A DNA stretch of 64,000 nucleotides from Mytilus californianus (taxonomy: Eukaryota). Shown here in pieces: positions 3,358 to 64,000 of the stretch (position 1 is the first letter of the stretch; every line of letters begins with the position of its first letter). Under the pieces are notes generated by a model. That model was not told the origin of the DNA, searched no databases, and was given only the letters and a program-made list of their open reading frames with translations. The DNA is taken from assembly GCF_021869535.1 (NCBI RefSeq), contig NW_026262593.1, positions 31,992,001 through 32,056,000 of the forward strand, given 5' to 3'. A program made the translations under genes and the position numbers.

Positions 3358-3605
3358 AAGAGGATCTGGATGGGGGTCCCTCATTTAATTATTCTTTATT
3401 TTTTTAAGACAATATTCTTGATTTATTTTGCCCATTATTCTCTATATATTCTTTATATTTTAACACCCCATTATTCTCTATTCTTAATTTCAATTACCTA
3501 TTCTTCTCCATTCTTTTTTTTCAAATGAATATTATATGTTTTGCCCTTTATTCTGCACTTTTTGGTCATTATTTTCTATTCTGTAAACCCCATCCAGATC
3601 CTCAT
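3358..3605. mobile_element. MITE with terminal inverted repeats
   Basis: gaggatctggatgggg (from 3360) and ccccatccagatcctc (to 3603) are perfect inverted repeats; flanks fit a TA or an ATTAAA duplication; internal attattct(c/t)ta repeats. Confidence 0.8.
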
Positions 3606-8007: not shown

Positions 8008-8274
8008 CTAAACGAACTAGAATAAATAAAATTTCAACATATACATATTGAAATGTATAACTAGAAAGGAAATAGGTTGCTTAAATTTTAAGGCGAATAA
8101 AAAAAAGGAATATTTTGATAAGGAAGACAATATACCATTGATAGAAATAATTTAAAAGATTTAAGGGGAAATATTTTTTTCTGATGAGAAATACGATTTA
8201 CTATTAATAGAAATGATTTAAAAGATAAACGGGAAAGATTGTTTTTTCTCACCGTAAACGTTGTTGCCGATAGT

Positions 8275-9100: not shown

Positions 9101-10136
9101 TAGAGTTATGAACAAATTGCGCAAGATGTAGTTAATATTTTATCTCTGGAACTGAAGTTTTTTTTCCAAGATTGATGAAAATAGATATGTCTATTAATAG
9201 TGTTATAATAAGATTAGGTAAAAAAAAAACAATAAAGAAGTAAACATACTACTATGGGTAACGAAAATTAGTGACACATAACTTTTAGTAAAAATTTTAA
9301 TATTTATTGTGTAGGTGTAGGGTTAGATAAAATGTTTGAATTATTTTTTCTTATTGTAAATATATATATGTTTGTATATCTTAAGTCTTGTATAAATACA
9401 CATATCTAGTTTTTATTTTGTAGGATTTTCAAAATTGTAGAAGTTGTATAGGACATTTTTTTTGTTCTAACCAGATAATTTGATATTTAAGAGAACGTAT
9501 TGATTCATACATAGAAATTGTTTTACTAAATTTTGCTAGGCTTGAATAACCCAGTGAACTAAAGGCGATTAAACAAACTATCGATACTCTAATTGACAAA
9601 TTAAAAAAAAAAGAAAAGAAATTGAAAACGTTTTAGTTTTTCCAAATTGGAGTAGGTTTATCAGTGGGTTTAGGTGCGATCTTCTTTGAAGTAGCCATAT
9701 TTTTGTACTGTTATTATATTAGAAATAGATCTTGGTTAGCCAAAAAGAGGAGTGTGAGTTCTGGTTTAAATGCCACGGACGATAGGTACAAAATGGTGTC
9801 AACTCAGCTGGTTGGGACGGATGCTACTGCTTCCATGAGATGTCTCCCTTTGCGCCATTGATCAAGGATGAAACTAAACCAAAGACCGATGCTAATAGTC
9901 TCTCGAGAAAAATGTACCCAGATCTAGATACGTCAACTACTTCGTAATGGGAATAGATTGTAAACCTTACAACGTTGATGACCGGATTCACTAGTAGATG
10001 ATGAACCGTGTAACTAATTTAGAGAAATAATATGAACTGTGCAAATAGAATGGACCGACACTTGTACAAAGAATTGTGCACTTTCCGGAAGTTGATGAAG
10101 AATATGCTATGATGGTGACGGAAAATATTATGATCC

Positions 10137-25744: not shown

Positions 25745-26945
25745 AACTTGTGTTGTAGGATCTCAATAATGACGACTTTGACTCTAAAGCACCCTGATTG
25801 CACCTGTGCTAGTTCCCCATTCATAGTTCCTATATAATCCGACTGGCCACGTTATTACTGGTGACCTAAACATTGTCAATAATACTTCTCTGCGAAATGT
25901 TTTATTTAAAGGGCCGAAATATCGTGAGCCTAAATCCATGAATTGGAAACACAACATCAAATACTAACGGATTCAGTCGAGGATTATCGTATCAAACATA
26001 AGCTAAAAGAACTCGCCAAGGAATTTGTTTTTGGCCCGGCTGATAAGGCTGCTAATAATATCATTATTGTTTAACATAAATTTTACATTGAGATTCTTCA
26101 ATAGGAAATCACGAATTCACCTACATTCAAACTGATTCCATTTTTGGAAAATGACATCTGTAACTAACATAAACTTTTAGCTATACTTTACAAGCAGAAC
26201 CAAATACAATGAAAGTTCCAACTATGTACTGGCTTCCGAAGCTGCACAAAACCCCTTACAAATATAGATTTATTTCGTTTTCAAGCCATTGTTACACTAC
26301 TAAACTGTCTATTCTACTTACTAGTACACTTGGAACAATCAAAAACCTGGTAATACATTGTTCAAATAAAGCCTTTGAAAATAGTGAAATTAATTACTTT
26401 TGGAGTGTCAAAAATTCGTTGGAAATACTTGATGAATTGCATGCTTATATTGGTGATTTCAAATCTATTCAAAGTTTTGATTTTCCTACTCTATATACTA
26501 CTTTGCCTCATAATCTCATTAAGAAAAAATTCACACACCTAATTAAATGGGCATTTAAAAAGTCAGAATGCGAACATATATGTTCAAACACTTTTAGGTC
26601 ATTTTTTTAGTAACAACAAACAAAAGAACTATGTCAATTGGACCTGCATTGATACGATAACTGTACTTGAATTTTTACTAGATAACATTTTTGTTCGGTA
26701 TGGAGATTCCGTATATCGTCAAGTAATCAGAATTCCAATGGGGACTAACTGTGCACCACTTATTGCGGACCTGTTTCTGTATTGTTATGAGTTACAATTT
26801 ATGACTCAAATCAACAAAGACCCATCGAAACAACATCTGATACAAAAATTTAATAACACTCTTAGATATTTGGATGATATTTTGGCTCCAAATAATGACG
26901 ACTTCAGTATGTACACTAAAGAGATTTATCCTGCTGAACTGGTGA
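25745..26945 (+). pseudogene. Penelope-like RT fragment 1 (frameshifted, 3'-truncated)
   Basis: YWLPKLHKTPYKYRFI, SFDFPTLYTTLPH, MGTNCAPLIADLFLYCYE and RYLDDILA; stops at YPAEL. Confidence 0.85.
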
Positions 26946-28165
26946 CTTGAGGCGTGAATAATCAGATGTGGATACTAAAAAAATCCAAAGATCTTTTAGA
27001 GTTCATACAATCTAAAACTCTTTCATCTTGCAATAGTATTAACACATTTGACTTTTTCTACACTAAACACAAGTATTCCCCATTCCAAACTAAAAGGCAA
27101 ATTGAAAAAGTTGGTCCTGCTTTGTTTTATAAAAAAGAATGGCCAACGGAGATACATGTATCTTGTTCTAGGGAGGGATAAATCGTACTTTGTAAAAAAA
27201 TCACTCTGATTCGAACAAAAAAAATTCTCTGAAACTGACATTATCAAGATGCTTGATTTCTTGATTGACAACATATTTGTTACGTTTGGAGGACGTGTTT
27301 TTCAACAAACAATTCGCCTTTCCATTGGAACCAATTGTGCTCCTCTTCTTTCCGACTTGTTCCGTTATTCATATGAGGCTGACTTCATACAGGAACTTTT
27401 TAGGAAGAGAAAAAAGGTTCGCAGTATCCTTTAACTTCACTTTCTACGATATGGATGATGTTTTCTCACTAAATAATTCAAAATTTGGTGACTATGTTGA
27501 AGACATCTATCCCATCGATCTTGAGATAAAGGATACAAGAGATACAGTTAAGTCTGCCTCATATCTTGACTTACATCTAGAAATTGACAATGAGGGTCGG
27601 TTGAAACAAAACTTTACGGCAAAAGTGATGATTTCAGCTTCCCAATTCTGATTTTTTCCATTTCTGCATGCAGCAACATTCCAGCAGCACCTGCATACGA
27701 CGGATATGATGAACAATGAAGCTATTAAACAAAGAGTTCCAAGTGATGAAGTTGAAATCATCACTTCGGAAAATTACAGATGCCATTACGACTTGGTTGA
27801 CCGTTATGGAATATATCCGTTTCATAGATGACAACGGATATATTCAAATTGTCGTAACTACAATCCCGTCCCCTTTTCCCCGAATGTGACCTATCGAATA
27901 AGACTTATCACCGGGTTTGTACCAACATGAGCAAAAAGACGGGTGCCACATGTGGAGCAGGATCTGCTTACCCTTCCGGAGCACTTGACATCACCCCCAA
28001 TTTTTTGGTGAGGTTCGTATTGCTCAGTCTTTAGTTGTCTATTTTGTTATTAGTGTACTGTTGTTTGTCTGTTTGTCTTTTTTCGTTTAGCCATGGCGTT
28101 GTAAGTTTATTGTTAACTTTCGCCTCTCTTTTATCGGTAAACACTATCGTAATATATCATATATG
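26945..28165 (+). pseudogene. Penelope-like RT fragment 2 (family A subfamily, 5'-truncated, with 3' end)
   Basis: QMWILKKSKDLL, GTNCAPLLSDLF, YDMDDVFSL and SYLDLHLEID; the 3' region is the reverse complement of 8275-8575. Confidence 0.85.
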
Positions 28166-32714: not shown

Positions 32715-34192
32715 AACCGTCACCCCAATAGAAGATTTGCAGTTGCGACTTATAGCGGATGGCACCCTTGCTGCCAATAGCCACTATTCACTTTGAATCT
32801 TTAAACAGTGAATGCACATATATACATCACAACACATCTGTCTGTAAATTTTCATGAAGTTGAAAGCACTTCTCAATTTTTCACATTTTTACTGTTTCCA
32901 TGGTAACAGCGGCCATTTTGGAAATTCCAAAATCAAAAGCCACATCTGCACATACCAGTTAACATTTCTTTAAAGTTTCGTAACGTTTGGAGCATTTAAA
33001 TTTTTTTGCATGTTTCCTGGTGGCTATTTGGATAACTCCAACAACAACTGCCACATTGACTCATGCCATGTTACATATCCACAAGGTTTCATTGGGTTTG
33101 ATCCAATATTCGTTTAGAAAATGCAGTTTTAATGTGTTTTCCAATAGGGTTAATGTTAACGTTCCCCTTGTTGCCATGACAATTTTGAAATTTCTAAATA
33201 CTGTCTGCACATCTAGGCATAGTTCCCATTACATGACGTCTCAAGGTTAATTTCTCCCCCGCATATTAGTCATCAATTTGAACAGCTGATCGAAGAAAAG
33301 ATGTAGACTACTGGTGCACCAACGTTACCTTGATTACTTATACTTCGTTTGTGTTATTTTTCTAATACGATAAGTTCACTTGACATTCTTTTAGATACGA
33401 ACTATTCCAGGTCATGATACTCTGATACTTGTGCAGTAACATTTTTTAAAGCAATAAAGCATTTGCCGTTTGAATTGTTCCGAAGTGTCAAATGTAGAAC
33501 CTAATAATGAAATTTTGTGTAACCCAACGCTTACCAGAACGATGTAAACATTTTTCTTTTCTTCAGTGTTGTATGAATTCCGTTGCGACGACCATCTTGG
33601 ATTTCAAATCGGCAACAAAATTACGAAGTTGGAAATTCCCCTGCCTCCTCCTTCCCCCTTCCCCCCCCCAAAAAAAAAGAAAAAAAGAAAAAAAGAAAGA
33701 ATATATATCTAAATATTAAATTGGCAGGGTGATTTCTGGTAAAAAAAATTATGTGAAGTTTCAGTCAATAAAAACCTATAATTTGTGCTTTAAATTTCTA
33801 TTGCAAAAAAATACCTCATTGATTTAGGGGGAACATCTCAGTAATATTTCTGCCATGTTGTTAGCCCTTTTTTTCTGAAGAAAAACTATAAAGATGCGTT
33901 TTAATGGGATGATTATATGTTCTTCACAATTGGTGATCTTCGAATTCAAATCAAAATACCCTTTTTGTAAGACATAAATCGTCACTCATGCACAATGCTG
34001 AACGAGTTTCTCTCAAACCATATCTGAGGAGATGCCGTCTAGATGGTTATCTATGTTAAATAAGTATTACTTGGAGGGCATTTTATTTTTTGTTTTGGAT
34101 CGTGTTTTGGATCAGTAATAGAATGCCGTGGCGAGTAAACCCCATATCCATTCCAAAATATAACACGTTATCAAAAGAACCACTGAAGGTAC

Positions 34193-34411
34193 AAAAGAGG
34201 GACAAAAGATACCAGAGGGACAGTCAAAATCATAGATCGAAAACAAACTGACAACGCCATGGCCAGAAATAAAAAGACAAACAGACAAATAATAGTACAG
34301 ATAACACAACATAGAAAACTAAAGACTAAGCAACACGAACCCCACCAAAAACTGGGGGTGATCTCAGGTGCTCCGGAAGGGTACGCAGATCCTGCTCCAC
34401 ATGTAGCACCC
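34193..34411 (-). mobile_element. Family A Penelope-like 3' end fragment, specific to unit 2
   Basis: Near-identical to 8275-8492; absent at the paralogous site near 19390. Confidence 0.85.
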
Positions 34412-34722
34412 TGTTTACAATCCACCCTGTTTAAATTTTCTAAATAGGTTCTTAGAAGCTGGACGCTTCCGTAATGCGTGTATACGTGTATGTACATTTT
34501 ATGAATATTATTATAAATAATTGATACCATTAGCGTTAAAGGAAATATTTAAAGCTAATTTTCTCCATAAGATAATTTTAAAAGCGATAACTAGTATATT
34601 AAAAAAAATATTGTTTAATGATTGATATCAAGTATTGTAACCGATACAAATAGTTTTAGTTTAAATGTATAGTTATATGTTTTAATGATTTTGTTTGATT
34701 TCAGGTAGTGATACGTCAGACT

Positions 34723-36114
34723 ATGTCAGAGAAGAACCTACGTCCGTACTCACAAACAAACCCCAAAATGTCAAGGACATTGGGATTATTAGAAACAATC
34801 TACCACAAGTATACCTGCCGAGAAATTGATGTCATTCCTGTATACTTTAAAATGTCGACAAAACATCCTGTAACGCGTCATCACGTTCAGGAAGCATTGT
34901 TTACACTTGTAGATGAATATGCAGCTTTGCGATTAACAATTGTCCAAACTGGCCGCCATTCCTACAAATTTGTTGAAAGGAAACACATGCCCGTTTCCAT
35001 CCATGAACAGTACACAAACACTGACGAAACAATACTGATTGAAGAACGACTACATAAATTCGATTTTAGTCGAGGTCCTCTTTGGAAATTTACATGGTTA
35101 AAACATCCAACTAGGCATGGTGAAAATTCATTGCAATATCCATTCCATTTCTTCTTCATTTTTCATCATGCAATATCAGATTTTAATCAAATTCATATAA
35201 TCGTTCAGAGCTTGACCAGAAACATTCTTAACTCACAGAGAGTACTGTCAACAGCTCCGATATACAAGCGCAATCTATGTCCATCGATCGAACATGTTAT
35301 ACCATTGGATGTTGTAAAGAAAGTATCTCAGCCAAACCATAGCACAAAATGGCCAACATGTGCAATAGACACATACAATGCAGCATTTCATTACGAAATC
35401 GCAGAACTGCAGAAAAAAAATATTTCAACAGAAATGTGCACCCTACAACTAAAGGAGACGGAGTCGAGATCATTTTTCCGACAATGTAAACACCATAACG
35501 TTAAAATAACGTCTGCAATAGTTACAGCCATGACTATTTCGTTTACACAGCTTATTCAAACAGCACTTCCATCGAGTTCCAGCAGATTTGTTGTCCCCGT
35601 AGAAATAATGGTTGACTTAACAAGATACATTATAGATGACAGAATTAAACAGTCGTTTGGAAGCGTCGGGGCAATTCACCTACCATTTCTAGTTGAGATG
35701 AATCTCTTAGACCTAAAATCCAAGGGAAACTTTTGGTCCATAGCTCAACAATGCCAGACACGACTTGACCAAAGTCTAGCTACCGGGGAACCAATGAAAG
35801 TGTTACTGCGAGACGTTCCATCAGAAATAAACAATCAACCGAGAATGGGGAAGTCACCATTTGTCTTGTCTATTTCAAACATGGGCAGTCTTGATGATAT
35901 TATTCCGGAAACGTGCAAACATGAAATTCAGTTAGATGATTTCACTCTATGCACAAATGTCACTGTAGATTCCATGCCAGTGTTTTGGACAGGGTTCCTC
36001 ACGTTGAACGAATCATTAAAAATCGTGGTAGGCTATTGCAATAGCTACACTTCTAAGCAGACGACATTTGTATTTATAAATTCGTTAAGGGAGCTTTTAA
36101 TAAATTCCAGTTAG
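34723..36114 (+). CDS. HHxxxD acyltransferase copy 2 (463 aa from ATG 34723; exon starts at 34705)
   Basis: Intact ORF collinear with copy 1; HHAISD at 35164-35181; same tttcag acceptor. Confidence 0.8.
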   Translation: MSEKNLRPYSQTNPKMSRTLGLLETIYHKYTCREIDVIPVYFKMSTKHPVTRHHVQEALFTLVDEYAALRLTIVQTGRHSYKFVERKHMPVSIHEQYTNTDETILIEERLHKFDFSRGPLWKFTWLKHPTRHGENSLQYPFHFFFIFHHAISDFNQIHIIVQSLTRNILNSQRVLSTAPIYKRNLCPSIEHVIPLDVVKKVSQPNHSTKWPTCAIDTYNAAFHYEIAELQKKNISTEMCTLQLKETESRSFFRQCKHHNVKITSAIVTAMTISFTQLIQTALPSSSSRFVVPVEIMVDLTRYIIDDRIKQSFGSVGAIHLPFLVEMNLLDLKSKGNFWSIAQQCQTRLDQSLATGEPMKVLLRDVPSEINNQPRMGKSPFVLSISNMGSLDDIIPETCKHEIQLDDFTLCTNVTVDSMPVFWTGFLTLNESLKIVVGYCNSYTSKQTTFVFINSLRELLINSS

Positions 36115-49730: not shown

Positions 49731-50608
49731 ATAAAAAGTGTTTACAGAATTTCAAGTTAAGCTTTTCCATTTCCAAATCTTTGAAGATATCAAAAAGAGG
49801 AAGAGGTTTTCTCTTTTGAGTAATGTTAATGACCCCCCCCCCCCGTTCTCTATGGAAGGGTTTACCATGTTTACGTTAAAGCGAAAATAAATACATGTAA
49901 CTGTTACAGACAGATAATGGTATACAATGACATAATATGGTACTTAATTATAAAAAAAAAAGTAAATAAACGTCGAGAAAAATAGAAACATATCTTAATC
50001 TTTGATCCACTTCATTACATGCTACTTGTTAATCAGCGTCTATCCAATTTATCACCCAACACCTGACATTTTTTTTGATAATACCTGTCCTATTTACATT
50101 TTCTGTTTTGATTTTCCGAAAATAGAAATAACGATTTTAAAAATGGCTGTAGAAACAGGAAGTATGATCTAACAATTGAAGGATATTGAAGAATTGAAAA
50201 TGAAAGTAAGTAAATTAATATTGATTGTACAAACAATGGATTTCCAGTTAATGAGTACAGTCACTCTATTTGAGCAACCATATTTCATTTATATGCTGCG
50301 GCAAAGATAAAACAAACTAAACATAATAAACGCCATTTTATTGTTAGTTAGACATTCTAGAACGATCAACGATTCTTTTCCAATATATTCATTCAGAATC
50401 TCATTAGCTGACTGAAGGACTATCGTCCTGGTTTTGGCATTATATAAATACTCTCTCGTTATTATAATATATCATTTTGATTACTCGTTGCTCATTTTAC
50501 CTAGCACACACGTATGCACTATTTTAGATAAAAATTTGGTCGTGCTTTGCTGGTTGTTGAATGTCGAATAAACGTATTTCTTTTTTGATGAACGTGTTTT
50601 ATTGTTTG

Positions 50609-51696: not shown

Positions 51697-52704
51697 TAAA
51701 TGATAAATTAAGACGACAGTTCAAATCTCGTAAACCGACGTAGAAGAGACTAATTCAAGTAACAAACACTGAATGAATCACATGAACTACAAAAGTAGCT
51801 AGACCGGGTTGCATCGACAGGGTAAGCGTCTCCTGCTGGGTATGCATTAACTGCCATGCCATGCAAATCCACACTCCTTCAAAATATCACATTCAGGAGT
51901 AGGACACAATCGGTTCAATGACAGATCAGACAGACTATACTGATATTTAAAGATGGAAGACCGCAGACATGTCAAGTAAAGGGGATTTAATACTTTAAAT
52001 AAGCTTTCAGCAGTCTTTAGCATTCTTCCTTATTATGATAAGTTGTTACTCGTATCAACTATTATCAGAAACAGACCATTGGTCGTTCTTTGCTTATCTT
52101 ATTCATAATTTGTCAACCTTAGCTATATATAGAGGTAATTTAGAGCATGACACAATAACATAAACTTTACTATTGCTACTTATGGAATATAAAAAAGAAG
52201 AAGTCTATTTCTTAAAGATCTTTGATACTCATGGAAGTATGTTTATCTTTCAATGTCTGGTTAAAGTCTTCTTGACAAACTTTCCAATTCTGTTTTAATT
52301 TTTTACGATGTTAGCTTCTTTACCTAAATAGATACAATGATTAAACATCATTATGAACAGTGAAATAAAAATAAAATGATAATGATACTTTTGAATACAT
52401 AAATGTTAAATATTGATTCTCTCGTGACTTGCAAAAGGCAGTCGAAATATACCAAATGGATATTCAAACTAGTAATTCGAAGACAAACTGACAAAGACAA
52501 GGCAAAAAAATGAAAGAGGGCCAAAAGACGACTAACAGTCTACAAAACACAACATAGAAAACTACTGAGCAACATGCACCCAACAAAAATCGAGGTGATA
52601 TCAGGTGCTCCGGAAGGGGAGATCCTTTTCCACATGTTGCAACGCACATATTGGTCGAATATGGGTTCATTTCTCATTTTTTTTTTCATTATGTTCACAG
52701 AAAT

Positions 52705-52912
52705 ATGAGTGATGAAGAAGAAATAGTTGGAAGTGATTTTATAGGATCGGATGATGAAGAGAAATCAGTCGAAGCTCTTGAACTTAAGTTGCAAAAAATC
52801 CTGCAAGAAAAAGAAAAGTTAGAAAAACAGAAGAAAAAAGATGAATTACTGTCAAAAATCAAGCAAGCTGAAGCCGCTCTGTCGAACTTACAGACCTTAG
52901 CTGAACCTTCAA
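52705..52912 (+). CDS. SWIM / 4E-binding-motif gene, coding exon 1 (acidic, coiled-coil; MSDEEEIVG...AEPS)
   Basis: Acceptor ttcacag ending 52700, ATG 52705, donor gtaaga at 52913 (phase 1). Confidence 0.75.
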
Positions 52913-54117
52913 GTAAGATAACAAAAGAAAAAATATATAACAAAAAAAACAACAACCAAAGATCTTTGAGAAATAGACTAAAGTGGTTATTCTGTTTTAG
53001 TTGTTTGTTTTTGCTGCAGCAACCAATCAATACACTGATAACAATTATGAACCTTGATTAAAATAAGTCACTCTGTTTATATTTAAAACACATGTAAGAA
53101 GTTACAGTTAAAACTTCAGTCTGTTCTCTTCATCAGCCAGTACCTAAATATACAGAAAATAAGGTATATCTTTTAGTCGTAAACTAAATTCCAAGACAAT
53201 ATAACACAAACATTGCTTTTGTTAAAATGAACAAACATTACAAGAATATGATATTTTTTATCAAAATTTCCAAAAGGGCTTGGATATGACTATGAGATTT
53301 AAGTGTATTGGTTCACAATGCGAAATAATAATTATCCATTTTGTATGAGTAATGTAAGAACACAAATCATGCAGAATTTCAATTTATAGTTTTTAAAAAT
53401 GTAATAAAAGTCAAAGGTACATATTTTTTTTCTTCATCTAAGCACTTTTGGATTATCTCTTACCACTTCCAAAGTAAAATTTCGATATTCTACGTCCGTT
53501 TTAAATATTCAATATGACTTTGCTATTCAAATAACATTTCCATTTATGAGTAGCAAAAATTTGCATAATATTTGATATTAAAAGATAATTTTTTTCATTA
53601 TTTTATAACTTTTTTATACTTTTAGTATTTCAAGTGTCTTTTAAACTCACCATTTCGACGGTTCGAACTATGTAGCACACAATAATTGAGATTTAAAAAG
53701 TGTGGTTCTTAAGACTGTCTTATCTTAAAGTTATTGCCACTTCTAATGTTGAGATGTGATTTCAGTTCAATTTCCTTTCATGACTATGTCAGAAGATTTT
53801 CTTTTAGGTTGAACATTCTCAAAAGTTCTTATTCATAATACTTCTTTCAAGACAATGTCAAATAAGCTCCAAAGACACTACTGACCAATCCAAATGAGTT
53901 ATGAAAATGCTACATGTATATACTTACAGCATGCACTACATATTTGAAACATATACTGCATGTTATTGGTAATTTTTAACCAAAAGTTTTTTTCTCTTTA
54001 CCAAACATTATTTCATCTGTCTTTATGCACTTTTAGAAACAATAGAAATTTATCAAACAGACACTTCCGAAATCATCATAAAAATAAATGCTTAATCAAG
54101 AAAATGTACAATTGTAG

Positions 54118-54646
54118 AATCTGAAGTCGACTCATGGACAACAGATGAAATAAGGCAGTTCTTTCGAAGAAAAGGAATCATAGTCAAGAACAAACCATTG
54201 GAGCATCTAAGAAAATTGGCAAAGTCTGTAATTGACAGTAAAATCCCTGATCATAAGACAACCGCCCCTTCTGAAATAAGTAAACGAACTATAAATTATA
54301 ACGGAAAAGACCTCACATTTCCAGGTATAAAAGACAAATCGTTATCAAATTGGTCAGATGATATATCATCTTTGCCATCAGTTGATCATGTACAAGCACA
54401 TGCGTACATAATATCGTCTGCTGAGTTCGATCTTGAGCGATTCCGAAATATACAGAAGGAGGATAGCTACTTGTTATATAAAGGAAATGCCATAAAAAAA
54501 TGTAAAGTACATAAACTAGATGAAGGCTTTTGTTATGTTACATGTAATTGTATGTCTAGTAAAAACAGTCAAACGAATTTAGAGGTTGTGTGGACCTTAA
54601 TTCAAAATGATGGATGTATACAGACAGCCGGTTGTTCATGTGATGA
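54118..54646 (+). CDS. SWIM / 4E-binding-motif gene, exon 2 (pre-SWIM module ending in AGCSCD)
   Basis: Acceptor ttgtag (phase 1 match), open frame SEVDSWTTDEIR...WSDDISSLP...TAGCSCD, donor gtaagt at 54647 (phase 2). Confidence 0.85.
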
Positions 54647-56062
54647 GTAAGTTTTTGTTGAAATTGATATTAAAAAAGAGAGGCGGAAGAAACCAAAGGC
54701 ATAGAGTCAAACTCATAAGAGGAAAACGAACCAACAATGCCATTACATATAAAAAAAAAAAACGAAAAAAAAAACGAAAAGACAAACAACAATCTACAAA
54801 CACAACATATAAAAAACTAGAGATTGAGCAACACGAACCCCACTAAAATACGGGGGTGATCTAAAGTGCTCCGGAAGGGTATACACCAGATCCTGCTTCA
54901 CTGGTGTCATCCGTCGTGTTGCGTATGTAAATACAAACCCGATGACTAGTTTAATTTGATATATCACATTCGAGGAAAAGTATGGTGCTTGAATATCATG
55001 AGATGATTAATTATGTAGACGTTCCTACCTTCACTCTGTTTAAGTTTTAATACAATTCCAATACAGAGAGAGATGATACCGAGGCGGCAATCAAATATCA
55101 TAAGTCACAAAAACACAAACTTCACCATTGCAAAACAGAAAAACGTACAAACAAAAAACGACAGTCACCAAAACAATTCACAAAAAAACTAAAGACTGAA
55201 ACTATAAACATTAACCTCACCAAAAACCATATACTCATGTGCCCAAAAAGGGTTAGCAGTTCTTTTCCCAAAAAAGATACCCGTTAGTTTAAATACGTTA
55301 ATGAGTCATAATTGGTAATTAAGCATCATACAGTTGAGGATTAATGAACGTCTCTTCTCTTACCCTAAGCCATTGACAAATGTACAATAGAAGATAATAC
55401 ATACTAGAAATTGTGCAATTAAAACTCCAGGTGATGTTCATATAATGCTTATAAAAGCTGATTATTTGTTGTTTCACGATATACCACAAACGTTGCATTG
55501 TCGACTAGTCAATTCAAATTATTTGTGTAATATCTATATTGAGTAAATTCTGCATACATTATAGGCATATGTGTCTCTAGACATCTGAGTGACATTCGGT
55601 AAAAAAAAAATCTTACTTGAGATAAATTTTAGAAGTAGCAATGTTTTAGAAAATATATACTGGAGAGGCGAAAGATTCCAAAAGGACATTCAAACGCATT
55701 GGTGTGCTATGGTAAAAAATCTTACTGGAGATAAATTTTAGAAGTAGGAGAGGCGAAGGATACCAAACTCATAAGTCGAAAACAAACTGACAATACCATG
55801 GCAAAAAACGAAAATAAAGATAAACAACAGTACATGAAATAAATTACTAAAGAATATCTTATGAATGTAGGAAATTTATGATTTGTTTAAACTTGGATCA
55901 TTTTATTGCCGTATTAATATTATTTATGGGTTATTGTATTCTTTTTAAAAAAGACCAGTATATAATTTGATTAACCTAAATATGTAAAAGCTAAATATGT
56001 ACAGATAAAGTATTAGTTGTGTTAAAAATAATTACTATTTGTTATGTGAATTATTTTGACAG

Positions 56063-56147
56063 GGGTAGTGATTGCTGCATGCATACTATAGCTTTAATGT
56101 TGACCTTAGCATCGTTAAACAAGAGCAATAATTATGCGGCGGATAAG
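56063..56147 (+). CDS. SWIM / 4E-binding-motif gene, exon 3 (EGSDCCMHTIALMLTL...DK), completes CxC-x6-CxH
   Basis: Acceptor tttgacag (phase 2), donor gtaaac at 56148 (phase 0); too short for the ORF track. Confidence 0.8.
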
Positions 56148-57585
56148 GTAAACTTAATCCAAAATCTACGACTATAGTAAGAATATTAATGTTGGTCAAA
56201 ATCTCTAGTTTCTATTACACAAATAAATAACAACATACCGAATTTTGAATTTAACCTTGTATCATATCCTCATTTTGAAATGATGCACGACTTTACGGAG
56301 TATGCAACGTTTAAGTTACTCAAAATAAAAGAAAAGTGACACTTTAAGGGGCACTAGCTGTCAAATTAATGTTCACCGATTAGAAAAAAAATTCTCATAT
56401 TTGATTTATTACATACAAAAACGTATATCTAAATTACAAAAAGTCTAAAATAAACAATTAACAATACATGGACTCAATAATATGTATCAGCATTTCGTGT
56501 GTATTATATCTAATTAACCATATAGATGACATACGAAGACTGCCGATGGTCATATAACTCGATATAAACATAAATATGAATAGAGAGCCATGTGTAATTG
56601 GATATTCTAGGTCTGTTTGATTTCATATTGTAGGTTAAAAAGTATGTTTATCATCGTTTTAACCTGTATAAGAACGATTTTTTGTTGATCGAATCAGTCA
56701 ACCAAATGGTTTATCCTTGTTTCATTTTAAATGTTGAGATTCTTTTCCTTTTAATAGCTGAATACATGCGTAACTCATGTCCAGCGAAGGGGTTGAATTA
56801 AAGGTCACATGAAAACGGATTCAATGAGGTCGAATTATTCACTTGTAAGTGAATAATTCATCAGTGATGTTTCTTAGCTTATTTTGAAAAAAAAGCAAAT
56901 TGGCTGCTAAAAGCGAATCGTTATTTCACTATTTCACTTTCATTAATGATTGAACATTTGTGTCTCGCATCAAATTGTCTTCAACAGCAATGTAGAGTTT
57001 ATAGGATTGAAGTTAAATTGTTGTTAATTCTTAAAGTATATTTATTTAAAATTACTTTAATCAACTTTAACATTTGACTCAAACAAATACAAGAAAAGTT
57101 TTCCATTCCGTTTCTTTGGAAGAATCATCTTTGAATAGTATTTTTCCAACTGAAGATTTTTATTAGGAAGACGAATAGATATAAGAACGATTTTGCTCCT
57201 CAATCTTTTTAAGATAGCTGCAATTATATTGATATCTTAAATAAATATGTGTACATCATTTAAAAATTTGTCAAGCATCAATTTCAAAATTTATATATAT
57301 CTACCTAGAAAAAAGCACTCGTTACAGGGCTAGTAAAACCACCAGGATATATAGGTTGACTAATATATATATAACATCATACGAAATGAGGTTTTACATT
57401 GATTTTAATCTTAAATAGTAATATTGTTAATAACATTTTTTTAAAGCAGCTCAATATTGCAACATACTTAATGAATAGATCTGTATAGTGCAATCAAACA
57501 TGAGTTAGTAGATACAGAGCTATTTCAAGTAAAATGATATACGTAAATAAGTTGTTTAGTGTTCACGGATCTTTTTTGTCTCAAG

Positions 57586-58137
57586 GTACAGCGAGTTGAT
57601 ATAGGGACTAAACTATATGCAAATCGAAGTTTAACAAATCTACAGCATGGTAAAGACGGCTTCTCTAAGACAAATTATCTAGGAGAGGAAATGAAAGAAT
57701 CACGTCGTAATAAAGTCTATACATATCAATCAGAGGGGAGCGAAGAGGAAGAGGAGGCGGCACCAGAAGTATGGGTACCTCCAACAATGCTAGAAAATAA
57801 ATCAGCTATAGCCGATAGAATCAACGAATCACTCAGCAAGCAAAATGACAGATCAAATCCTTTAAGAAAGTCACACAACAATTATACTTTTCAGCGGTTT
57901 GAACCTAATACTTCTGAGAAAGGTAATTTGGATCCTAATTCTCCAAAGCTCCATATGTTGAATGAAAAAAGCACCGGAGATGCAACATCTATAAATCAAT
58001 TGCAGTCCAAGTTTGAAGCTAGACTGACAAAAAGTCCTATTGAAGTAAAAATTGAAGGTGCAGGGAAATCAAGTGAAATATCTGCACACAATCGAGAAAC
58101 GCAACTAAATTCCAGAATTCTTCACAATATCAAAGAG
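57586..58137 (+). CDS. SWIM / 4E-binding-motif gene, exon 4 (low-complexity, S/E/N/K-rich)
   Basis: Acceptor ttttttgtctcaag, 552 nt open, donor gtattt at 58138, phase 0/0. Confidence 0.8.
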
Positions 58138-58159
58138 GTATTTATAAGCATAAAAAATA

Positions 58160-58600
58160 CTCTGATTCAAACAAACTTTTTTTCTGAGACTGACATTATG
58201 TAGATGCTTTTTTTTTGTTTGTTTTTTTGACAACATATTTTTACGTTTGAAGGAGGTGTTTTTCTACAAATAATCGACATTTCAATGGAAGCCAACTTTG
58301 GTCCTCGTCTTGTTGACTTGTATCTATGTTATATGAGACAGACTTCACACAGGAGCATCATAGGTAGACTATAAAAAGAAAGTAACATTTATCTTTTATT
58401 CCACGTGCCCTATATAGATGAATTCCTCCTCTCACTTCACGTAATAATTCAAAGTTAGGTAACTGTTTTAAAAGCATTTATTCCATTGAACTTGAAATAA
58501 AGGATATCACAGATACAGCTAAATTTGACTCCTATGTAGACATATATCTAGAAATTGATTACTAAGTTGAGAACAAAAAACTTTACAAAAGGGGTGATTT
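58160..58600 (+). pseudogene. Degenerate Penelope-like RT remnant in intron 4
   Basis: Similar to 27200-27640. Confidence 0.7.
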
Positions 58601-58670
58601 CAGTATTCAGGTTGAATTGAATTGCATTTCTATAACTATTGTAGAAGTAATTTTCCATTTGAATTTTCAG

Positions 58671-59510
58671 ATTGAAAAACCACGCAAAGAGTCAACCGAA
58701 CCAAAACCCCTTATTCCATCCAGAGAAAATGTACTTAGTAATCTTAAAGAACAATCCATGAAAAGGGATAGGCAACAAACCGTTGGTAAGATTCCTACTT
58801 TGCAGGAAAATGCACTACATTCAAATACTATTAAAACTACTGGAAACGGTGGAATGATATTTAAAAACGTTCCTCTTAAAAGTGGCGAAATAAATATTTC
58901 ACATAAACCAATGACGAATAGCGAGAATCTACCTGTCAACACATGCATTACTATGCCTACTTCATCAAAGTCTTATCCACATGCAACAAGTATAGAACAA
59001 ACAACTGTCCACATACCAGTCACGCCTTCAGTAAGGTCTCAACTGGGATTTGCAAACAAGTACCCATTGCATGTAACGGATCCTCAACAGAAACCTATCT
59101 CTGGATTGGGTTACCCCATGCAAGTTAACTCAACTGCCGTACCAACAGATGTATCTACATATACGACTGGTCAATTACCTAAACCTTCATCATCATATCT
59201 ATACCCTCAGCAGACTATTGCGTCTACTGTTACCCGAGGGTATAATCCGGTTTACCAACCAACGGTACCTGTACCACTTGTTTACCCAGCAGCACCAGTG
59301 TTATTCCCAGCAGAACAACCACATGTGAATTTCATGTCAAATGTTGCTCCAGTTTCAAATCACAATAAACCTCAAGTGATAATGGATCCGCAACCCGGTT
59401 TGTTTGGTCCTCGTTATCCAACAGCATATCCGTATTCTAGTTCAAATGCTTCTTTTCCGACGCCACTGGTGTATCCTTCCGATGAAACAAGAAGTGTTAA
59501 AAACAAACAA
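58671..59510 (+). CDS. SWIM / 4E-binding-motif gene, exon 5 (P/T/S/Y-rich, likely disordered)
   Basis: Acceptor gaattttcag, 840 nt open, donor gtaagt at 59511, phase 0/0. Confidence 0.85.
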
Positions 59511-60332
59511 GTAAGTTCTTAGTGTATTCAAAATTCGTATTATAGAAATAAAACATTTTTAGAGTTCGTAATGCCTAGTAAATTATGCAGCCTGAACCTT
59601 TTTTTAATTTGTTTCTTAGAGACGATTGTTGTATTTTATCACCTTTAATTAACGCAACAAATTTACCAAATAAATTTATTTCAATGATGAATTAAAGGAA
59701 AATGGAAAGGTATCTCAGGTATTACTACTTCGTGCTCGTATTCTACTAAGGGTTCTCCCGTTATAATTGTATTACTTTCCAATATTTATAAAAACAGGAA
59801 ATGCAATTGGATTTCCAATGTAACAACTCGCCAACAAAGAGCAATGAACAAGATTGTAAACAACTTCCCCTCATTACACGGCTTTCAACTATGAGCAAAA
59901 CCTATACCATTAAGTAAACTAGTATATAAAAGTTTTAAGGATTACAAAACGATAAAACATTCAAAAGAGAAGATTCCTGTTAATACTGTAGGAAGAACAA
60001 CTATAACAGACGCCAATAAACAAGAACCGTTTGTCAACAGACTCCTTACCCAGAACAGAAACAAAAAGAACGTAGCTGGCTGAAAATATTGGTGAGCTAT
60101 CAACCGTCCCACATATGGGGACAACTATGATAGCTCTTGTTATACATTTAAATGATATCATTGTTATTGTACAATATGTTTGGTGTCAAATGTTAGACAT
60201 TTTAAAAGACAACTTTAATTATATAAATGTATATTATGTCCCAAAAAAACACATGACTGGAATAAAAAAATGTACAAAAGAAAATTAAGGTATTAAAAAA
60301 TATATGTTGAATTGATGTCGTTTAATTTTTAG

Positions 60333-60504
60333 TCTGTCCATACATTTGATATTGTTGAAACTAATTCTGACGTTCAAAAACCAAAAGTATGCAGAAAAGA
60401 TCGATTCATGACGCCAGCACCAACGTTAGATGAAAATAAAGAGTCCTCAAAACCTTCTCTCTCTGACAGATGTTCGTCAAACACTTCAGTAGCCGCGACG
60501 AAAG
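60333..60504 (+). CDS. SWIM / 4E-binding-motif gene, exon 6 (SVHTFDIVE...AATK)
   Basis: Acceptor tttaatttttag, donor gtacat at 60505 (phase 1). Confidence 0.75.
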
Positions 60505-61750
60505 GTACATTACATATCTTTGATTTTTGTTTTAATTTTCCGGCTCACTCTTTAGTTTTCTATGTTGTGTTTTGTAACTATTGTCTGTCTTTTTGGTCGT
60601 TGTTTGCTTTTTGCGACGGTATTGTCAGTTTGTTTTCGAGTTTTGATTTTGAATATCCCTTTGGTATGTTTCGCCTTTCTTGTGAATATTGAGACTCAAA
60701 AACTATTGGCAAATACATATGGATGTATCGACCCTTATTTGGGTGAATTGAACAACAAAAAAACCCCAAAAAACAACATCAAAAACTAAAATAACAAAAG
60801 AAAACAAAACAAACTCAGATGATTTATTAAATAATTAATAGCTTCTAATGGTGTCGCCTATTATTTGGTATTGTCATATTTGATAACATACCTTGTGATA
60901 AATTTGGTAAACGATTGCAGCTTGGCATTAGACCGGACCTAAACTTAGTAATAGGACATAACATCAAAATCTTATGCAATCCGTTAAAATGATAGGATGC
61001 ACTGTTTTTACATGCAAAATAAGTTATTGAACTCAAATTCGGTACCATCTGGAAATACGTTCTCATACACTTCACGCATTGTCATTGTAAGTGATATTAA
61101 ATCTACGACTGTTTAGCATATATATGAATATTTGCCATATGTCTTACTGGAGGAATCATATGCAGGCATGCTTGAGATATTGACCATTGTTTTTTTTTTT
61201 CTCTTATGAAATCAAGTAACTATAAACTCCGTAAATTGACAAAAGATTAAAGACATGTTTATTTACATGTTTGAATGCATTGCTTGAAATATGTTTTTTT
61301 CTAATGCATTGAACGTTCCATAAGAAGTTTATTTCCGAAAATCGGTACAAATGCAATTATGTAATATAAAAATGTTCATGTATGTGATCTATTGAAAGTC
61401 TCTATTCAACACTTCTTAGTATCAAAAGAGAAGTGGTATAATGCTTATGACAATAGGACGAAGATGTACGCAATTATAGGGCACTGTATGGCATTCGACA
61501 ATGGGCAAGACTAAGACCATATAGAAAACTACGAAAGGCCTTTGAATGACAAGTAGTGAAACAGTTCAAAAGAGAAAACCAACGACCTGATTTATATTCT
61601 TGTATTTCTAGAATGCTTGAATTATCATTTTTAATGTTCAGAATATAATATGGATATATTTCCTTTTTTTTTTTATGTTTCTGAAAGTATTAATTTCTTT
61701 GTGGAAACTAGCAGAAAAAGTGAATAAACATAAGATGATATATTTTTCAG

Positions 61751-61890
61751 TGCAAAGAATAACCTATGATAGAAAATATCTATTGAGACTCCGGAGGTCT
61801 GTGTTTTCACAACGTAGACCAGATAACATTGATCATATACCAGAAATACAAGTAGTTTCGGTAGTAGGTTTTTTATTGTTTAGAGCTTGA
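61751..61890 (+). CDS. SWIM / 4E-binding-motif gene, exon 7 with 4E-BP-like RITYDRKYLL...IPEI; stop TGA at 61888-61890
   Basis: Acceptor atttttcag (phase 1 match); YxxxxL-phi motif at 61765-61785; an internal donor after IPEIQ with further exons cannot be excluded. Confidence 0.75.
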
Positions 61891-63042: not shown

Positions 63043-64000
63043 ACCACACATGTCGATATGAACTGGGGAAGTAGTATTTATGAAGGTTATTAGTGTGGGT
63101 GGATGGGAAATAGTGTATAAAACTAACTTATATATCGTAACTTTTTTGTAACGAACGTCGCATTGGTCAACCGCGCCTTAAATTTTCCTTATATACTGAC
63201 CCCCGCAATCGTCCGTATAGAAAGGAATTTAAATACGGAAAACAGTTCTTGCAAATCAAGGACCGTAAAGCAAGAAATGTAGTAATAGGTGGAGGTTGTT
63301 CCCTTTAACATTATACAACTCACAATTTACTTTAAATAGATTTATTTTTAATTAACTCAATTATTGGACCCGAATTAGAGAAGAATAATCATTCAAAACT
63401 AGTAAAACACATTGGTTAATAAAGAAAACATTGCACTAGAAAATTAAAGAAACTTAAATGAATCACATAAGTCAAACAATCATGTCGCAAATTGTTTAAA
63501 TAATTATTAATATATTTTAGTATGATGGAACGCCTGTTACATATCGTCCATTTACTTTTACTCCTGGATATGTAAAACGTGCAACGGACATGGTATGTTT
63601 AAAAATGTAGAGGTTACTAATATATATTATACATAATTTCGCATAGAAGATTAATAGTGCTTCAACAAGAGACCCACCCTCTTCAGAATCAATTGAAAAT
63701 TAAAACCACAAGGACGTTTTTGACTTTATCAGTAACTGTTATTAAGTTCGAATAAACTGGAGCGTTTGAAAAACGAATAAAATACACCAACCGAGCGATT
63801 AAATCACCCTATAGAAGGATTCAGCCATGGACATGGGTCAAGTTTGAAATCATACAGTCTTGAAAAGTAACTCAGATTGTTACTGCCATCTTAATCCAAT
63901 TATCTAAAGGACATAACACATCACTTTATAACTAAGAGAAACACAGACAAGGTGCGAGACATGGGAAAGGCATATGAAAATGTGGCTTTATCTAAGTTTA

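What the first reader, a model, noticed from the sequence alone, without database searches (positions are those of the whole stretch)
52705..61890. Hidden 7-exon gene fusing a transposon-type SWIM zinc-finger module to a 4E-BP-like eIF4E-binding tail
Seen: ORF-track fragments plus a missed 85-nt exon splice through six GT-AG introns with matching phases (1,2,0,0,0,1) into one 2526-nt frame (841 aa). The order is acidic/coiled-coil N-terminus, SWIM module, about 520 aa of low-complexity sequence, then a 4E-BP-like segment. Known: 4E-BPs are small stand-alone proteins of about 120 aa. Inference: I know of no SWIM-finger protein with a 4E-BP tail. This could be a lineage-specific chimera that brings cap-dependent translational repression onto a nucleic-acid or protein-binding scaffold of transposon origin.
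Basis: partly seen in the sequence, partly recalled or inferred. Interest (0 to 1): 0.9.

Follow-up and report, generated by a model that had tools for sequence, protein, structure and literature searches.

The report
SWIM-headed eIF4G-like mussel gene
The seven exons are real, but they are only the first half of an annotated, unstudied mussel gene (Mytilus californianus LOC127719907) that joins a SAP-SWIM zinc-finger head to a shortened eIF4G-type translation scaffold, so the supposed "4E-BP tail" is an internal eIF4E docking site followed by a MIF4G domain.

Summary
The first 832 of its 841 residues match RefSeq XP_052082226.1, isoform X2 of the uncharacterized protein LOC127719907 of Mytilus californianus.

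The model ends too early. Its last 9 residues and stop are intron read-through. Exon 7 really ends at 61860 (alternative donor 61863) and splices to an eighth exon at 63521-63592. Seven more exons lie beyond the window, at window-equivalent 65191-71680.

The full product is 1097-1098 aa:
- an acidic coiled coil
- a SAP-like helix pair and a SWIM-type finger
- about 520 disordered residues
- a two-part eIF4E-binding motif
- an eIF4G-type MIF4G/HEAT-1 domain, after which the protein ends

The C-terminal 300 aa run parallel to human eIF4G1 611-986. Intronless mRNA contigs from two related mussels carry head and MIF4G in one ORF. dN/dS is low in the head (0.13-0.28), the motif (0.31) and MIF4G (0.18), and near neutral in the disordered middle (0.74).

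This is a mussel eIF4G paralogue with a new head, not a SWIM protein with a 4E-BP tail. No paper on it was found. The scan's note s1-320648 on adjacent DNA describes this gene's 3' half.

The parts
52705..52912 (+). Coding exon 1 (aa 1-69, phase 1 at its end): acidic stretch plus predicted long helix (coiled coil). An AG acceptor sits just upstream (exon starts about 52701), so at least one non-coding 5' exon precedes it.
   Evidence: It is 96% nt identical to mRNA contig L004 positions 99-306. dN/dS is 0.13. Helix 22-62 appears in the model. The related mussel's 5'UTR departs from the window 4 nt before the ATG.
54118..54646 (+). Coding exon 2 (aa 70-246): SAP/HeH-like helix pair (aa 74-106, 54129-54227), a beta-rich region, and the first half of the SWIM finger (C242 at 54633-54635, C244 at 54639-54641).
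   Evidence: Pfam Ish1 (HeH) scores E 7e-4 to 2e-3, below threshold. The cysteines are invariant in 5 sequences. RNA runs of the same species hold up to 100% of its sampled words.
56063..56147 (+). Coding exon 3 (85 nt, aa 246-274): second half of the SWIM finger (C250, C251 and H253 at 56073-56084) and its helix.
   Evidence: Both splice sites, the CxH pattern and the exon length are conserved in a related mussel's genomic contig L002, with 86% nt identity and no gaps, against 65-80% with many gaps in the flanking introns. It abuts E2 and E4 in mRNA L004.
57586..58137 (+). Coding exon 4 (aa 275-458): start of the disordered middle region. Isoform X5 uses an internal acceptor and skips its first part.
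   Evidence: The frame stays open, with only in-frame indels, in L001 and L002. dN/dS is 0.6-0.87.
58671..59510 (+). Coding exon 5 (aa 459-738): P/S/T/Q-rich disordered region.
   Evidence: RNA runs hold up to 88% of its sampled words. It is 67% identical to M. edulis XP_071146277 residues 457-728.
60333..60504 (+). Coding exon 6 (aa 739-796, phase 1 at its end): end of the disordered region.
   Evidence: It is identical to the RefSeq protein.
61751..61860 (+). Coding exon 7, corrected (alternative donor 3 nt later, at 61863). It carries the two-part eIF4E-binding segment: canonical YDRKYLL at 61765-61785 and the non-canonical hydrophobic part IDHIPEIQVV at 61828-61857.
   Evidence: Pfam eIF_4EBP scores E 4e-5. 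It aligns without gaps to both 4E-BP1 and eIF4G1 peptides of solved eIF4E complexes. RefSeq isoforms continue VVS|YDG or VVSV|YDG. dN/dS is 0.31. A short helix is modelled over the canonical motif.
63521..63592 (+). It is the last coding exon inside the window. Exons 9-15 lie at window-equivalent 65191-71680 and encode the MIF4G domain.
   Evidence: Found by tblastn and read directly. Exact mapping of the RefSeq protein on the genome locus L006.

Best explanation
The stretch is the 5' half of one protein-coding gene, Mytilus californianus LOC127719907. The gene has 15 coding exons and spans about 19 kb.

Its 1097-1098 aa product has these parts, from N to C terminus:
- a conserved acidic coiled coil
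- a SAP/HeH-like motif and a SWIM-type zinc finger
- a fast-evolving disordered region of about 520 aa
- a two-part eIF4E-binding segment (canonical YxxxxL-hydrophobic helix plus a non-canonical hydrophobic part)
- a spacer of about 70 aa
- an eIF4G1/3-type MIF4G (HEAT-1) domain, after which the protein ends

It is a divergent, C-terminally shortened paralogue of the translation scaffold eIF4G, with a SAP-SWIM head that known eIF4Gs do not have.

Inferred mechanism:
- The motif docks the protein on the dorsal and lateral surfaces of the cap-binding protein eIF4E, in competition with canonical eIF4G and 4E-BPs.
- The HEAT-1 domain offers the surface that in eIF4G binds the helicase eIF4A, eIF3 and RNA.
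- The SAP-SWIM head adds a nucleic-acid-binding or partner-binding specificity.

My odds, given that the gene is functional:
- about 45%: an alternative eIF4F-like scaffold that promotes translation of a subset of mRNAs
- about 30%: a competitor that sequesters eIF4E or eIF4A, since it lacks the post-HEAT-1 eIF3-binding region, HEAT-2 and HEAT-3
- about 25%: another mRNP role

The gene structure, the domain content and the selection pattern are shown. All binding and all effects on translation are inferred.
For: Gene model.
The protein continues through exon 8 into a MIF4G domain.
- The RefSeq protein maps exon by exon onto the same genome. The window equals L006 + 46704, and the CDS spans 52705-71680.

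One mRNA.
- Logan contigs L004 (3570 nt, ORF 99-3380, 1093 aa) and L005 (3798 nt, ORF 162-3650, 1162 aa) are intronless and carry both the SWIM head and MIF4G.
- Window exons E1 to E5 abut exactly in L004.
- RefSeq models of M. edulis (3 isoforms), and the M. coruscus annotation (P0013 and P0005, both on one 382,806-nt contig), also join the two parts.
- E2 and E5 are held by overlapping RNA runs of the same species: X4, X5, X8 and X9.

eIF4G nature.
- Pfam MIF4G scores 31.3-42.1 bits against a cut-off of 30.8.
- phmmer against solved structures gives eIF4GII 1hu3 at E 4e-18, eIF4G1 at 1.7e-14 and DAP5 at 8e-4.
- The MIF4G model has pLDDT 85-90.
- Foldseek top hits in the PDB are 1hu3 and eIF4G1.
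- In Swiss-Prot the top hits are eIF4G3 623-980 and eIF4G1 611-986, covering query residues 1-297, from the motif to the end of HEAT-1.

eIF4E motif.
- It aligns without gaps to the 4E-BP1 and eIF4G1 peptides of solved eIF4E complexes.
- L802, L805, E823 and I824 (full-protein numbering; L7, L10, E28 and I29 in A2) are invariant across the family. Y797 and D798 are conserved wherever the chosen ranges reach them.

Selection against L004.
- dN/dS is 0.13 in E1, 0.28 in SAP-SWIM, 0.31 in the motif and 0.18 in MIF4G.
- It is 0.74 in the disordered region and 0.72 in the linker.
- Against the distant L005, MIF4G gives 0.11 and SAP-SWIM 0.28.

Background. eIF4G HEAT-1 binds eIF4A, eIF3 and RNA, and part of eIF3 binding lies in the disordered region after HEAT-1 (review PMC9177959).
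Against: - Within M. californianus the joins therefore rest on the RefSeq models and on related mussels' mRNAs.
- One M. edulis annotation splits the locus into a 396-aa SWIM protein and a 685-aa MIF4G protein. The split falls inside exon 4, which is one uninterrupted exon here.
- MIF4G is only 20-24% identical to human eIF4G over the Foldseek alignments. The family's usual FIGELFKL helix reads FTGIIARL. Binding of eIF4A is therefore not assured.
- HEAT-2, HEAT-3 and the eIF3-binding stretch are absent.
- By sequence alone the motif is slightly nearer 4E-BP1 (17.2 bits) than human eIF4G1 (13.8 bits).
- The N-terminal model is poor (pLDDT 48), so the SWIM fold is not confirmed.
- Pfam SWIM stays below threshold.
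Confidence: 0.8

Rival explanations
1. An 841-aa protein ends in a 4E-BP-like tail, and this SWIM scaffold represses cap-dependent translation as a 4E-BP does.
For: The frame does run to a stop at 61890. Exon 7 hits Pfam eIF_4EBP at 23.9 bits and matches 4E-BP1 best among solved structures. An intron-7-retaining transcript would encode exactly this product, and I could not exclude one because no reads were laid.
Against: All five RefSeq isoforms, and both intronless mRNA contigs of related mussels, splice past this point into MIF4G. The residues after VVS are not conserved as protein, whereas exon 8 is. The MIF4G domain is under strong purifying selection (dN/dS 0.11-0.18). The segment has no proline-directed phosphosites, and the score is below the family cut-off.
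Confidence: 0.03
2. Two neighbouring genes, a small SWIM gene (exons 1-3 or 1-4) and an eIF4G-like gene, have been merged by gene predictors and by read-through or chimeric assemblies.
For: One M. edulis annotation gives separate proteins, CAG2231080 (396 aa, SWIM) and CAG2231081 (685 aa, MIF4G). M. galloprovincialis entries are partial and lack the head (P0016, P0017). Isoforms from an internal promoter cannot be excluded.
Against: The split in that annotation lies inside exon 4, a single 552-nt open exon here. The exon phases match across the supposed boundary. E3 abuts E4 exactly in mRNA contig L004. A second, far more distant species has the same single ORF (L005). No stop or separate start is conserved between the parts.
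Confidence: 0.05
3. The locus is a transcribed but functionless chimera, a decaying duplicate of eIF4G that captured a repeat-derived SAP-SWIM fragment.
For: The middle 520 aa evolve almost neutrally (dN/dS 0.6-0.87 and 0.74). The SAP-SWIM module resembles a multi-copy invertebrate family that usually carries a YqaJ nuclease, which is missing here. The family is paralogous and variable in length, from 1036 to 1577 aa.
Against: The open frame, the splice sites and all three modules are kept in at least five sequences, including one at only 50% overall identity. dN/dS is 0.11-0.31 in the head, the motif and MIF4G. Indels in the disordered part are in frame.
Confidence: 0.05

Closest known systems
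eIF4G1 / eIF4G3 (eIF4GI/II), the metazoan cap-complex scaffold
   Same: It has a two-part eIF4E-binding segment followed by a MIF4G/HEAT-1 domain. These are the best sequence and fold matches: 1hu3 at E 4e-18, and eIF4G3 623-980 and eIF4G1 611-986 covering the whole last 297 residues. A long disordered region precedes the motif.
   Different: The protein ends right after HEAT-1, so it has no eIF3-binding linker, MA3/HEAT-2 or W2/HEAT-3. Its N-terminus carries a coiled coil plus a SAP-SWIM module in place of the known PABP-binding N-terminus. It is only 20-24% identical to human HEAT-1 over the Foldseek alignments.
4E-BP1-3 / Drosophila Thor (Pfam PF05456)
   Same: The canonical motif and its surroundings are very alike: RI.YDRK.L...R.S, with M. 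edulis reading YDRKFLM as 4E-BP1 does. The spacing to the non-canonical hydrophobic part is the same.
   Different: 4E-BPs are stand-alone proteins of about 120 aa, regulated by proline-directed phosphorylation. Here the segment is internal in a 1097-aa protein, has no S/T-P sites in exon 7, scores below the Pfam cut-off (19.5-23.9 against 24), and is followed by MIF4G.
Yeast eIF4G (Tif4631/2)
   Same: A functional eIF4G that has a 4E-binding motif and a single HEAT-1 domain, without MA3 or W2. This is from my own knowledge. Fold matches to 2vso, 2vsx and P39935.
   Different: Yeast eIF4G has RNA-binding and PABP-binding regions and a C-terminal RNA-binding tail, and it has no SAP or SWIM. It is a weaker match than the animal eIF4G1/3.
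Drosophila/C. elegans Mextli
   Same: Another non-canonical protein that combines a MIF4G domain with a two- or three-part eIF4E-binding region. It is reported as an eIF4E-binding protein that promotes translation (PMC4573856; PMC9177959).
   Different: From my own knowledge, Mextli has the opposite domain order, with MIF4G at the N-terminus, then KH, and the eIF4E-binding region at the C-terminus. It has no SWIM, and no sequence match was seen here.
DAP5 / eIF4G2 and PAIP1
   Same: MIF4G fold (4iul, 3rk6).
   Different: By the review PMC9177959, DAP5 lacks an eIF4E-binding motif. Both are much weaker matches (DAP5 at E 8e-4; PAIP1 by fold only).
SAP-SWIM(-YqaJ/viral alkaline exonuclease) proteins of cnidarians, molluscs and arthropods
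   Same: Language-model look-alikes of residues 70-280 are clusters carrying SAP and SWIM, some with a YqaJ nuclease (score 0.94, 196 shared features). This fits the weak Pfam HeH and SWIM signals.
   Different: There is no nuclease domain here. The relation is a lead from an alignment-free tool and was not confirmed by any alignment. A word-based search for short relatives of exon 2 found nothing.

Membership tests
eIF4G family | eIF4E-binding motif Y-x4-L-hydrophobic lying N-terminal to HEAT-1 | tested here: met
   YDRKYLL lies at aa 797-803 (window 61765-61785). It is conserved in the family and aligns without gaps to the eIF4G1 peptide of 5t46 and to 4E-BP1.
eIF4G family | MIF4G/HEAT-1 domain of the eIF4G type | tested here: met
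   Pfam PF02854 scores 31.3 bits against a cut-off of 30.8 for this gene's product, and up to 42.1 in relatives. The best solved relatives are eIF4GII at 4e-18 and eIF4G1 at 1.7e-14. Fold search agrees.
eIF4G family | Same order and spacing of motif, spacer and HEAT-1 as in eIF4G | tested here: met
   Foldseek aligns query residues 1-297 (motif to C-terminus) to human eIF4G1 611-986 and eIF4G3 623-980.
eIF4G family | MA3/HEAT-2 and W2/HEAT-3 domains (metazoan eIF4G) | tested here: not met
   No Pfam hit beyond MIF4G. The protein ends within a few residues of the last HEAT-1 helix.
eIF4G family | Binding of eIF4A, eIF3 and PABP | not testable with these tools
   No complex prediction or assay was available. 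The usual FIGELFKL helix reads FTGIIARL.
4E-BP family (PF05456) | Score at or above Pfam's gathering cut-off | tested here: not met
   Exon 7 alone scores 23.9 bits, the full protein 19.5, and relatives 17.8-22.9, against a cut-off of 24. Only profile positions 46-85 of 117 are matched.
4E-BP family (PF05456) | Small stand-alone protein of about 120 aa | tested here: not met
   The segment is internal (aa 796-833) in a protein of 1097-1098 aa.
4E-BP family (PF05456) | Two-part eIF4E-binding segment (canonical helix plus non-canonical hydrophobic part at fixed spacing) | tested here: met
   Gap-free alignment over 31 residues to 4E-BP1 of 4ued and 5bxv.
4E-BP family (PF05456) | Proline-directed Ser/Thr phosphosites flanking the motif (knowledge of mammalian 4E-BP1) | tested here: not met
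   No S-P or T-P occurs in exon 7 (sequence). The nearest T-P is about 39 residues upstream, in exon 6.
SWIM zinc finger (PF04434) | CxCxnCxH signature | tested here: met
   C242-S-C244 ... C251-x-H253 is invariant in five sequences, down to 53% identity. It is kept in genomic contig L002. Four strands and then a helix are predicted, at low confidence.
SWIM zinc finger (PF04434) | Score at or above Pfam's gathering cut-off | tested here: not met
   No hit for this protein. Relatives score 13-17.3 bits against a cut-off of 19.6. UniProt's automatic name for relatives is 'SWIM-type domain-containing protein'.
Transposase-associated SWIM (MULE/FAR1-type) | Transposase or nuclease domain in the same protein | tested here: not met
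   Pfam on the full-length product shows none.
SAP/HeH motif | Helix-extended-helix motif recognised by a profile | tested here: inconclusive
   Pfam Ish1 (HeH) scores E 7e-4 to 2e-3, or 18.9-20.2 bits, against a cut-off of 26.6. Two helices, 78-87 and 97-109, have pLDDT 65-82. Look-alike clusters carry SAP.

The most novel reading that the evidence does not exclude
Mussels have built a lineage-specific second kind of cap-binding scaffold. A SAP-SWIM nucleic-acid-binding head, borrowed from a multi-copy, probably mobile-element- or virus-related exonuclease family, was fused to a minimal eIF4G core (eIF4E motif plus HEAT-1). This would give an eIF4F-like complex whose recruitment is governed by what the SWIM head recognises, for example particular RNAs, DNA-RNA hybrids or a partner protein. 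Such a complex could act in the germ line, in stress responses, or in the control of viruses and transposons.
Probability: 0.3. Interest if true: 0.6.

Novelty: new variant of a known kind. Interest (0 to 1): 0.4.

Why it matters
eIF4G paralogues are a recurring way for animals to set up specialised translation programmes. They normally vary by losing parts, as DAP5 lost eIF4E binding, rather than by gaining a foreign folded domain at the N-terminus.

Here a SAP-SWIM head, an eIF4E docking site and a HEAT-1 domain are all kept under purifying selection in several mussels. The protein lacks everything after HEAT-1. That makes it a natural minimal eIF4G with a new targeting module. It is a testable case of domain capture into the core translation machinery, in a group known for gene presence/absence variation and heavy repeat load.

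The finding also has a practical side. Two separate first-stage findings (this one and s1-320648) are halves of one gene, and a public annotation of M. edulis splits that gene in two.

It is not a new class of system. The proteins are already in databases as uncharacterized entries.

Tried and rejected
A second try beside them met the cap, so no junction reads of this species were seen.
   - After I sent no query containing those places to any search tool.
   - Local scripts read the whole window file.
   - The fetched locus L006 spans the same DNA.
2. My first guess for the exon 7 donor (CAA|GT at 61851) was wrong. The RefSeq isoforms use 61860 and 61863.
3. A word-based search with exon 2 (96-306 aa candidates) found nothing. 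With exon 4 it found only genomic exon ORFs of relatives.
4. Pfam on a 68-aa SWIM core gave no hit.
5. The AlphaFold model of the N-terminal 290 aa was too poor (pLDDT 48) to use in fold searches, so none was run on it.
6. Giant-virus origin of the MIF4G part. It was suggested by language-model look-alikes (score 0.95). I rejected it because viral MIF4G proteins match at only 14-16% identity and E about 2e-6, against 21% and E 1.7e-9 for animal eIF4G3.
7. Exact look-ups of isoforms P0003 and P0014 found no contig, because only the longest isoform is indexed. P0021 worked.
8. Literature searches for SWIM+MIF4G, eIF4G+Mytilus and SWIM+YqaJ+SAP found nothing on this protein.
9. I did not try to decide whether eIF4A-contact residues are kept. 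I had no reliable residue list or complex predictor.

Full report
**1. The observation.**
- The ATG is at 52705. The exons are 52705-52912, 54118-54646, 56063-56147 (85 nt), 57586-58137, 58671-59510, 60333-60504 and 61751-61890.
- They are joined by six GT-AG introns with phases 1,2,0,0,0,1. They give 2526 nt and 841 codons.
- All donors and acceptors have good consensus context.

The chain is therefore in the sequence as described.

**2. What the exons belong to.**
- A full phmmer scan with exon 5 found a 1053-aa protein in which exon 5 sits at residues 457-728, and a 1577-aa relative.
- These are M. edulis XP_071146277 and M. coruscus CAC5426667.
- Searching with the M. edulis isoform X1 returned nine relatives. 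One is P0014, XP_052082226.1, [quoted passage not shown].
It then continues YDGTPVTYRPFTFTPGYVKRATDM and about 240 residues more.
The real donor is TCG|GTAGTA at 61860. Isoforms X1 and X5 use GTA|GTAGGT, 3 nt later.
- The next exon lies inside the window at 63521-63592, with acceptor TTTTAG and donor GTATGT.
- Fetching the genome locus of the longest isoform (L006; GCA_021869535.1, JAKFGE010000011.1) showed that the window equals L006 + 46704. The CDS has 15 coding exons spanning window-equivalent 52705-71680.
- Exons 9-15 begin at 65191. The two first-stage findings are halves of one gene.
- The gene is not hidden. RefSeq lists five protein isoforms.

**3. Is the SWIM part really joined to the rest?**
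I worked beside those places and sent none of their letters to any search tool afterwards.

Indirect evidence for the join is strong:
- Two Logan contigs are intronless mRNAs with one ORF from the MSDEEE start to the MIF4G end. They are L004 (3570 nt, ORF 99-3380) and L005 (3798 nt, ORF 162-3650).
- In L004 the window's E1, E2, E3, E4 and E5 align at 99-306, 307-835, 836-920, 921-1469 and 1470-2285. They abut exactly at the predicted junctions.
- RefSeq models in two species and the M. coruscus annotation join the parts.
- The one annotation that splits them (M. edulis CAG2231080 and CAG2231081) breaks inside exon 4, which is a single open 552-nt exon here.
- In a related mussel's genomic contig, exon 3 keeps its length, both splice sites and the CxH pattern. 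It is 86% identical with no gaps, while the flanking introns are 65-80% identical with many gaps.
- RNA runs of the same species hold exon 2 (share up to 1.00) and exon 5 (up to 0.88). Runs X4, X5, X8 and X9 hold both.

**4. Domain content.**
N-terminus:
- The first 69 residues are acidic, followed by a long helix.
- Residues 74-106 give a weak HeH/SAP-type signal. Pfam Ish1 scores E 7e-4 to 2e-3, below threshold.
- The SWIM signature C242-x-C244 ... C251-x-H253 is split by intron 2. It is invariant in five sequences, down to 53% identity.
- Pfam SWIM gives nothing for this protein and 13-17.3 bits (cut-off 19.6) in relatives.
- The AlphaFold model of this part is poor (pLDDT 48). It does show four strands followed by a helix over the finger.
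- Alignment-free look-alikes are SAP/SWIM clusters, and SAP/SWIM/YqaJ-exonuclease proteins of cnidarians, molluscs and arthropods. No alignment backs it.

Middle:
- About 520 P/S/T/N-rich residues have no family hit.

C-terminus:
- Exon 7 carries RITYDRKYLLRLRRSVFSQRRPDNIDHIPEIQVV.
- It hits Pfam eIF_4EBP at 23.9 bits against a cut-off of 24.
- It aligns without gaps to both 4E-BP1 (17.2 bits) and the eIF4G1 peptide of the solved eIF4E complex 5t46 (13.8 bits). The motif alone cannot tell the two families apart.
- The context can. About 70 residues later a MIF4G domain begins. Pfam gives 31.3 bits against 30.8 for this gene's product, and up to 42.1 in relatives.
- Its best solved relatives are human eIF4GII (E 4e-18) and eIF4G1 (1.7e-14), far ahead of DAP5 (8e-4).
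- The model of this part is confident (pLDDT 85-90, eleven helices) and puts a short helix on the canonical motif.
- Foldseek ranks eIF4GII and eIF4G1 first in the PDB.
- In Swiss-Prot it aligns the whole 297 residues to eIF4G3 623-980 and eIF4G1 611-986, from the eIF4E motif to the end of HEAT-1.
- The protein then ends. There is no MA3, no W2, and none of the post-HEAT-1 region that contributes to eIF3 binding (review PMC9177959).

**5. Selection.**
Against the mRNA contig L004, dN/dS by region is as follows:

| Region | dN/dS |
|---|---|
| Exon 1 | 0.13 |
| SAP-SWIM | 0.28 |
| Disordered region | 0.74 |
| eIF4E-binding segment | 0.31 |
| Linker | 0.72 |
| MIF4G | 0.18 |

- Against the distant L005, MIF4G gives 0.11 and SAP-SWIM 0.28.
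- Exon 4 against two genomic relatives gives 0.6-0.87, with only in-frame indels.
- Head, docking motif and HEAT-1 are each maintained. The middle behaves as a spacer.

**6. Mechanism.**
- Shown: one gene, one mRNA in related mussels, the domain order, and purifying selection on three modules.
- Inferred from family knowledge: the segment binds eIF4E's dorsal and lateral surfaces as eIF4G and 4E-BPs do. HEAT-1 offers the eIF4A/eIF3/RNA surface (PMC9177959). The SAP-SWIM head adds a ligand specificity.
- The protein has no proline-directed sites in exon 7 (sequence). mTOR-type control as in 4E-BPs is therefore unlikely.
- Because it lacks everything after HEAT-1, it may act in one of two ways. 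It may form a minimal eIF4F-like complex, as yeast eIF4G does with one HEAT domain (my own knowledge). Or it may titrate eIF4E and eIF4A away from canonical eIF4G.
- My odds are about 45% for the first, 30% for the second, and 25% for another mRNP role.

**7. Comparison and novelty.**
- The nearest family is eIF4G1/3. Three defining features are met: the motif, HEAT-1 and their spacing. One is not: HEAT-2 and HEAT-3 are absent.
- Membership in the 4E-BP family fails on size, on threshold and on phosphosites.
- Mextli is a functional analogue (MIF4G plus an eIF4E-binding region; PMC4573856) with a different domain order.
- A giant-virus lead from the language-model search was rejected on identity and E-value.
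- I found no paper on a SWIM-eIF4G protein.
- The family was seen only in Mytilus species and in two unlabelled transcriptomes. There are at least two paralogues on one M. coruscus contig. My searches were word-limited, so a wider range is not excluded.
- Verdict: a new variant of a known kind, already in databases as uncharacterized entries.

**8. Score.**
What remains is a moderately interesting lineage-specific eIF4G paralogue with a captured folded head. Interest 0.4.

Noticed in passing
window-equivalent 65191-71680 (beyond the window; locus L006 18487-24976): The scan's earlier finding s1-320648 ('hidden eIF4G-like gene that stops right after MIF4G') is exons 9-15 of this same gene, LOC127719907.
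   Followed up: yes
window 19689-21101 (+) and 34708-36114 (+): Two tandem single-exon paralogues of 470 and 468 aa carry an HHxxxD-type motif. Pfam gives alcohol acetyltransferase (AATase, 25.7-28.1 bits against a cut-off of 22) and a weak Condensation domain.
   Followed up: partly
window 52699-52704 and 50184-50216: An AG acceptor lies 4 nt before the start codon. A related mussel's mRNA 5'UTR departs from the window exactly there, so a non-coding 5' exon should exist. The only candidate match is 33 nt at 50184-50216 (88% identity, E 3e-5).
   Followed up: partly
window 61860/61863 and inside 57586-58137: The RefSeq isoforms show alternative splicing. Two donors 3 nt apart end exon 7 (VVS| or VVSV|). 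Isoform X5 uses an internal acceptor that skips about the first 100 codons of exon 4. M. edulis isoforms skip the exon 8 equivalent or part of exon 6.
   Followed up: partly
window 8088-8429 (-), 34171-34530 (-), 52464-52670 (-), 60505-60692 (+): A dispersed repeat reads as similar Cys/Phe/Leu-rich pseudo-ORFs (for example ...CCLVFSFLCCVICTIICLFVF...). One copy abuts the 5' side of coding exon 1 and one lies in intron 6. I did not examine them.
   Followed up: no
window 8576-9124 (-), 26209-26610 (+), 27265-27651 (+): These are ORF fragments that share near-identical peptide stretches (…YIDDVLSL…, …GDYVE.IYP.ELEIKDT.DT…), which look like remnants of a retroelement. Pfam found nothing for the first.
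   Followed up: partly
loci L004 and L006; proteins P0005, P0013, P0016: Divergence is uneven along the gene. Exons 1-4 are 94-97% nt identical to contig L004, but exon 5 is only 85% identical and exon 6 is barely alignable. Paralogues differ by large tandem expansions of a roughly 20-aa S/P-rich unit in the disordered region (P0005 has 1577 aa; also P0016). Two paralogues share one M. coruscus contig. Gene conversion or exon-level turnover among paralogues is possible.
   Followed up: no
protein P0014 residues 796-1097: The nearest language-model clusters are giant-virus (Nucleocytoviricota) MIF4G proteins of about 290 aa (score 0.95). By fold and identity they are more distant (14-16%) than animal eIF4G3 (21%). 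The likeness probably reflects a shared minimal eIF4G format rather than descent.
   Followed up: yes
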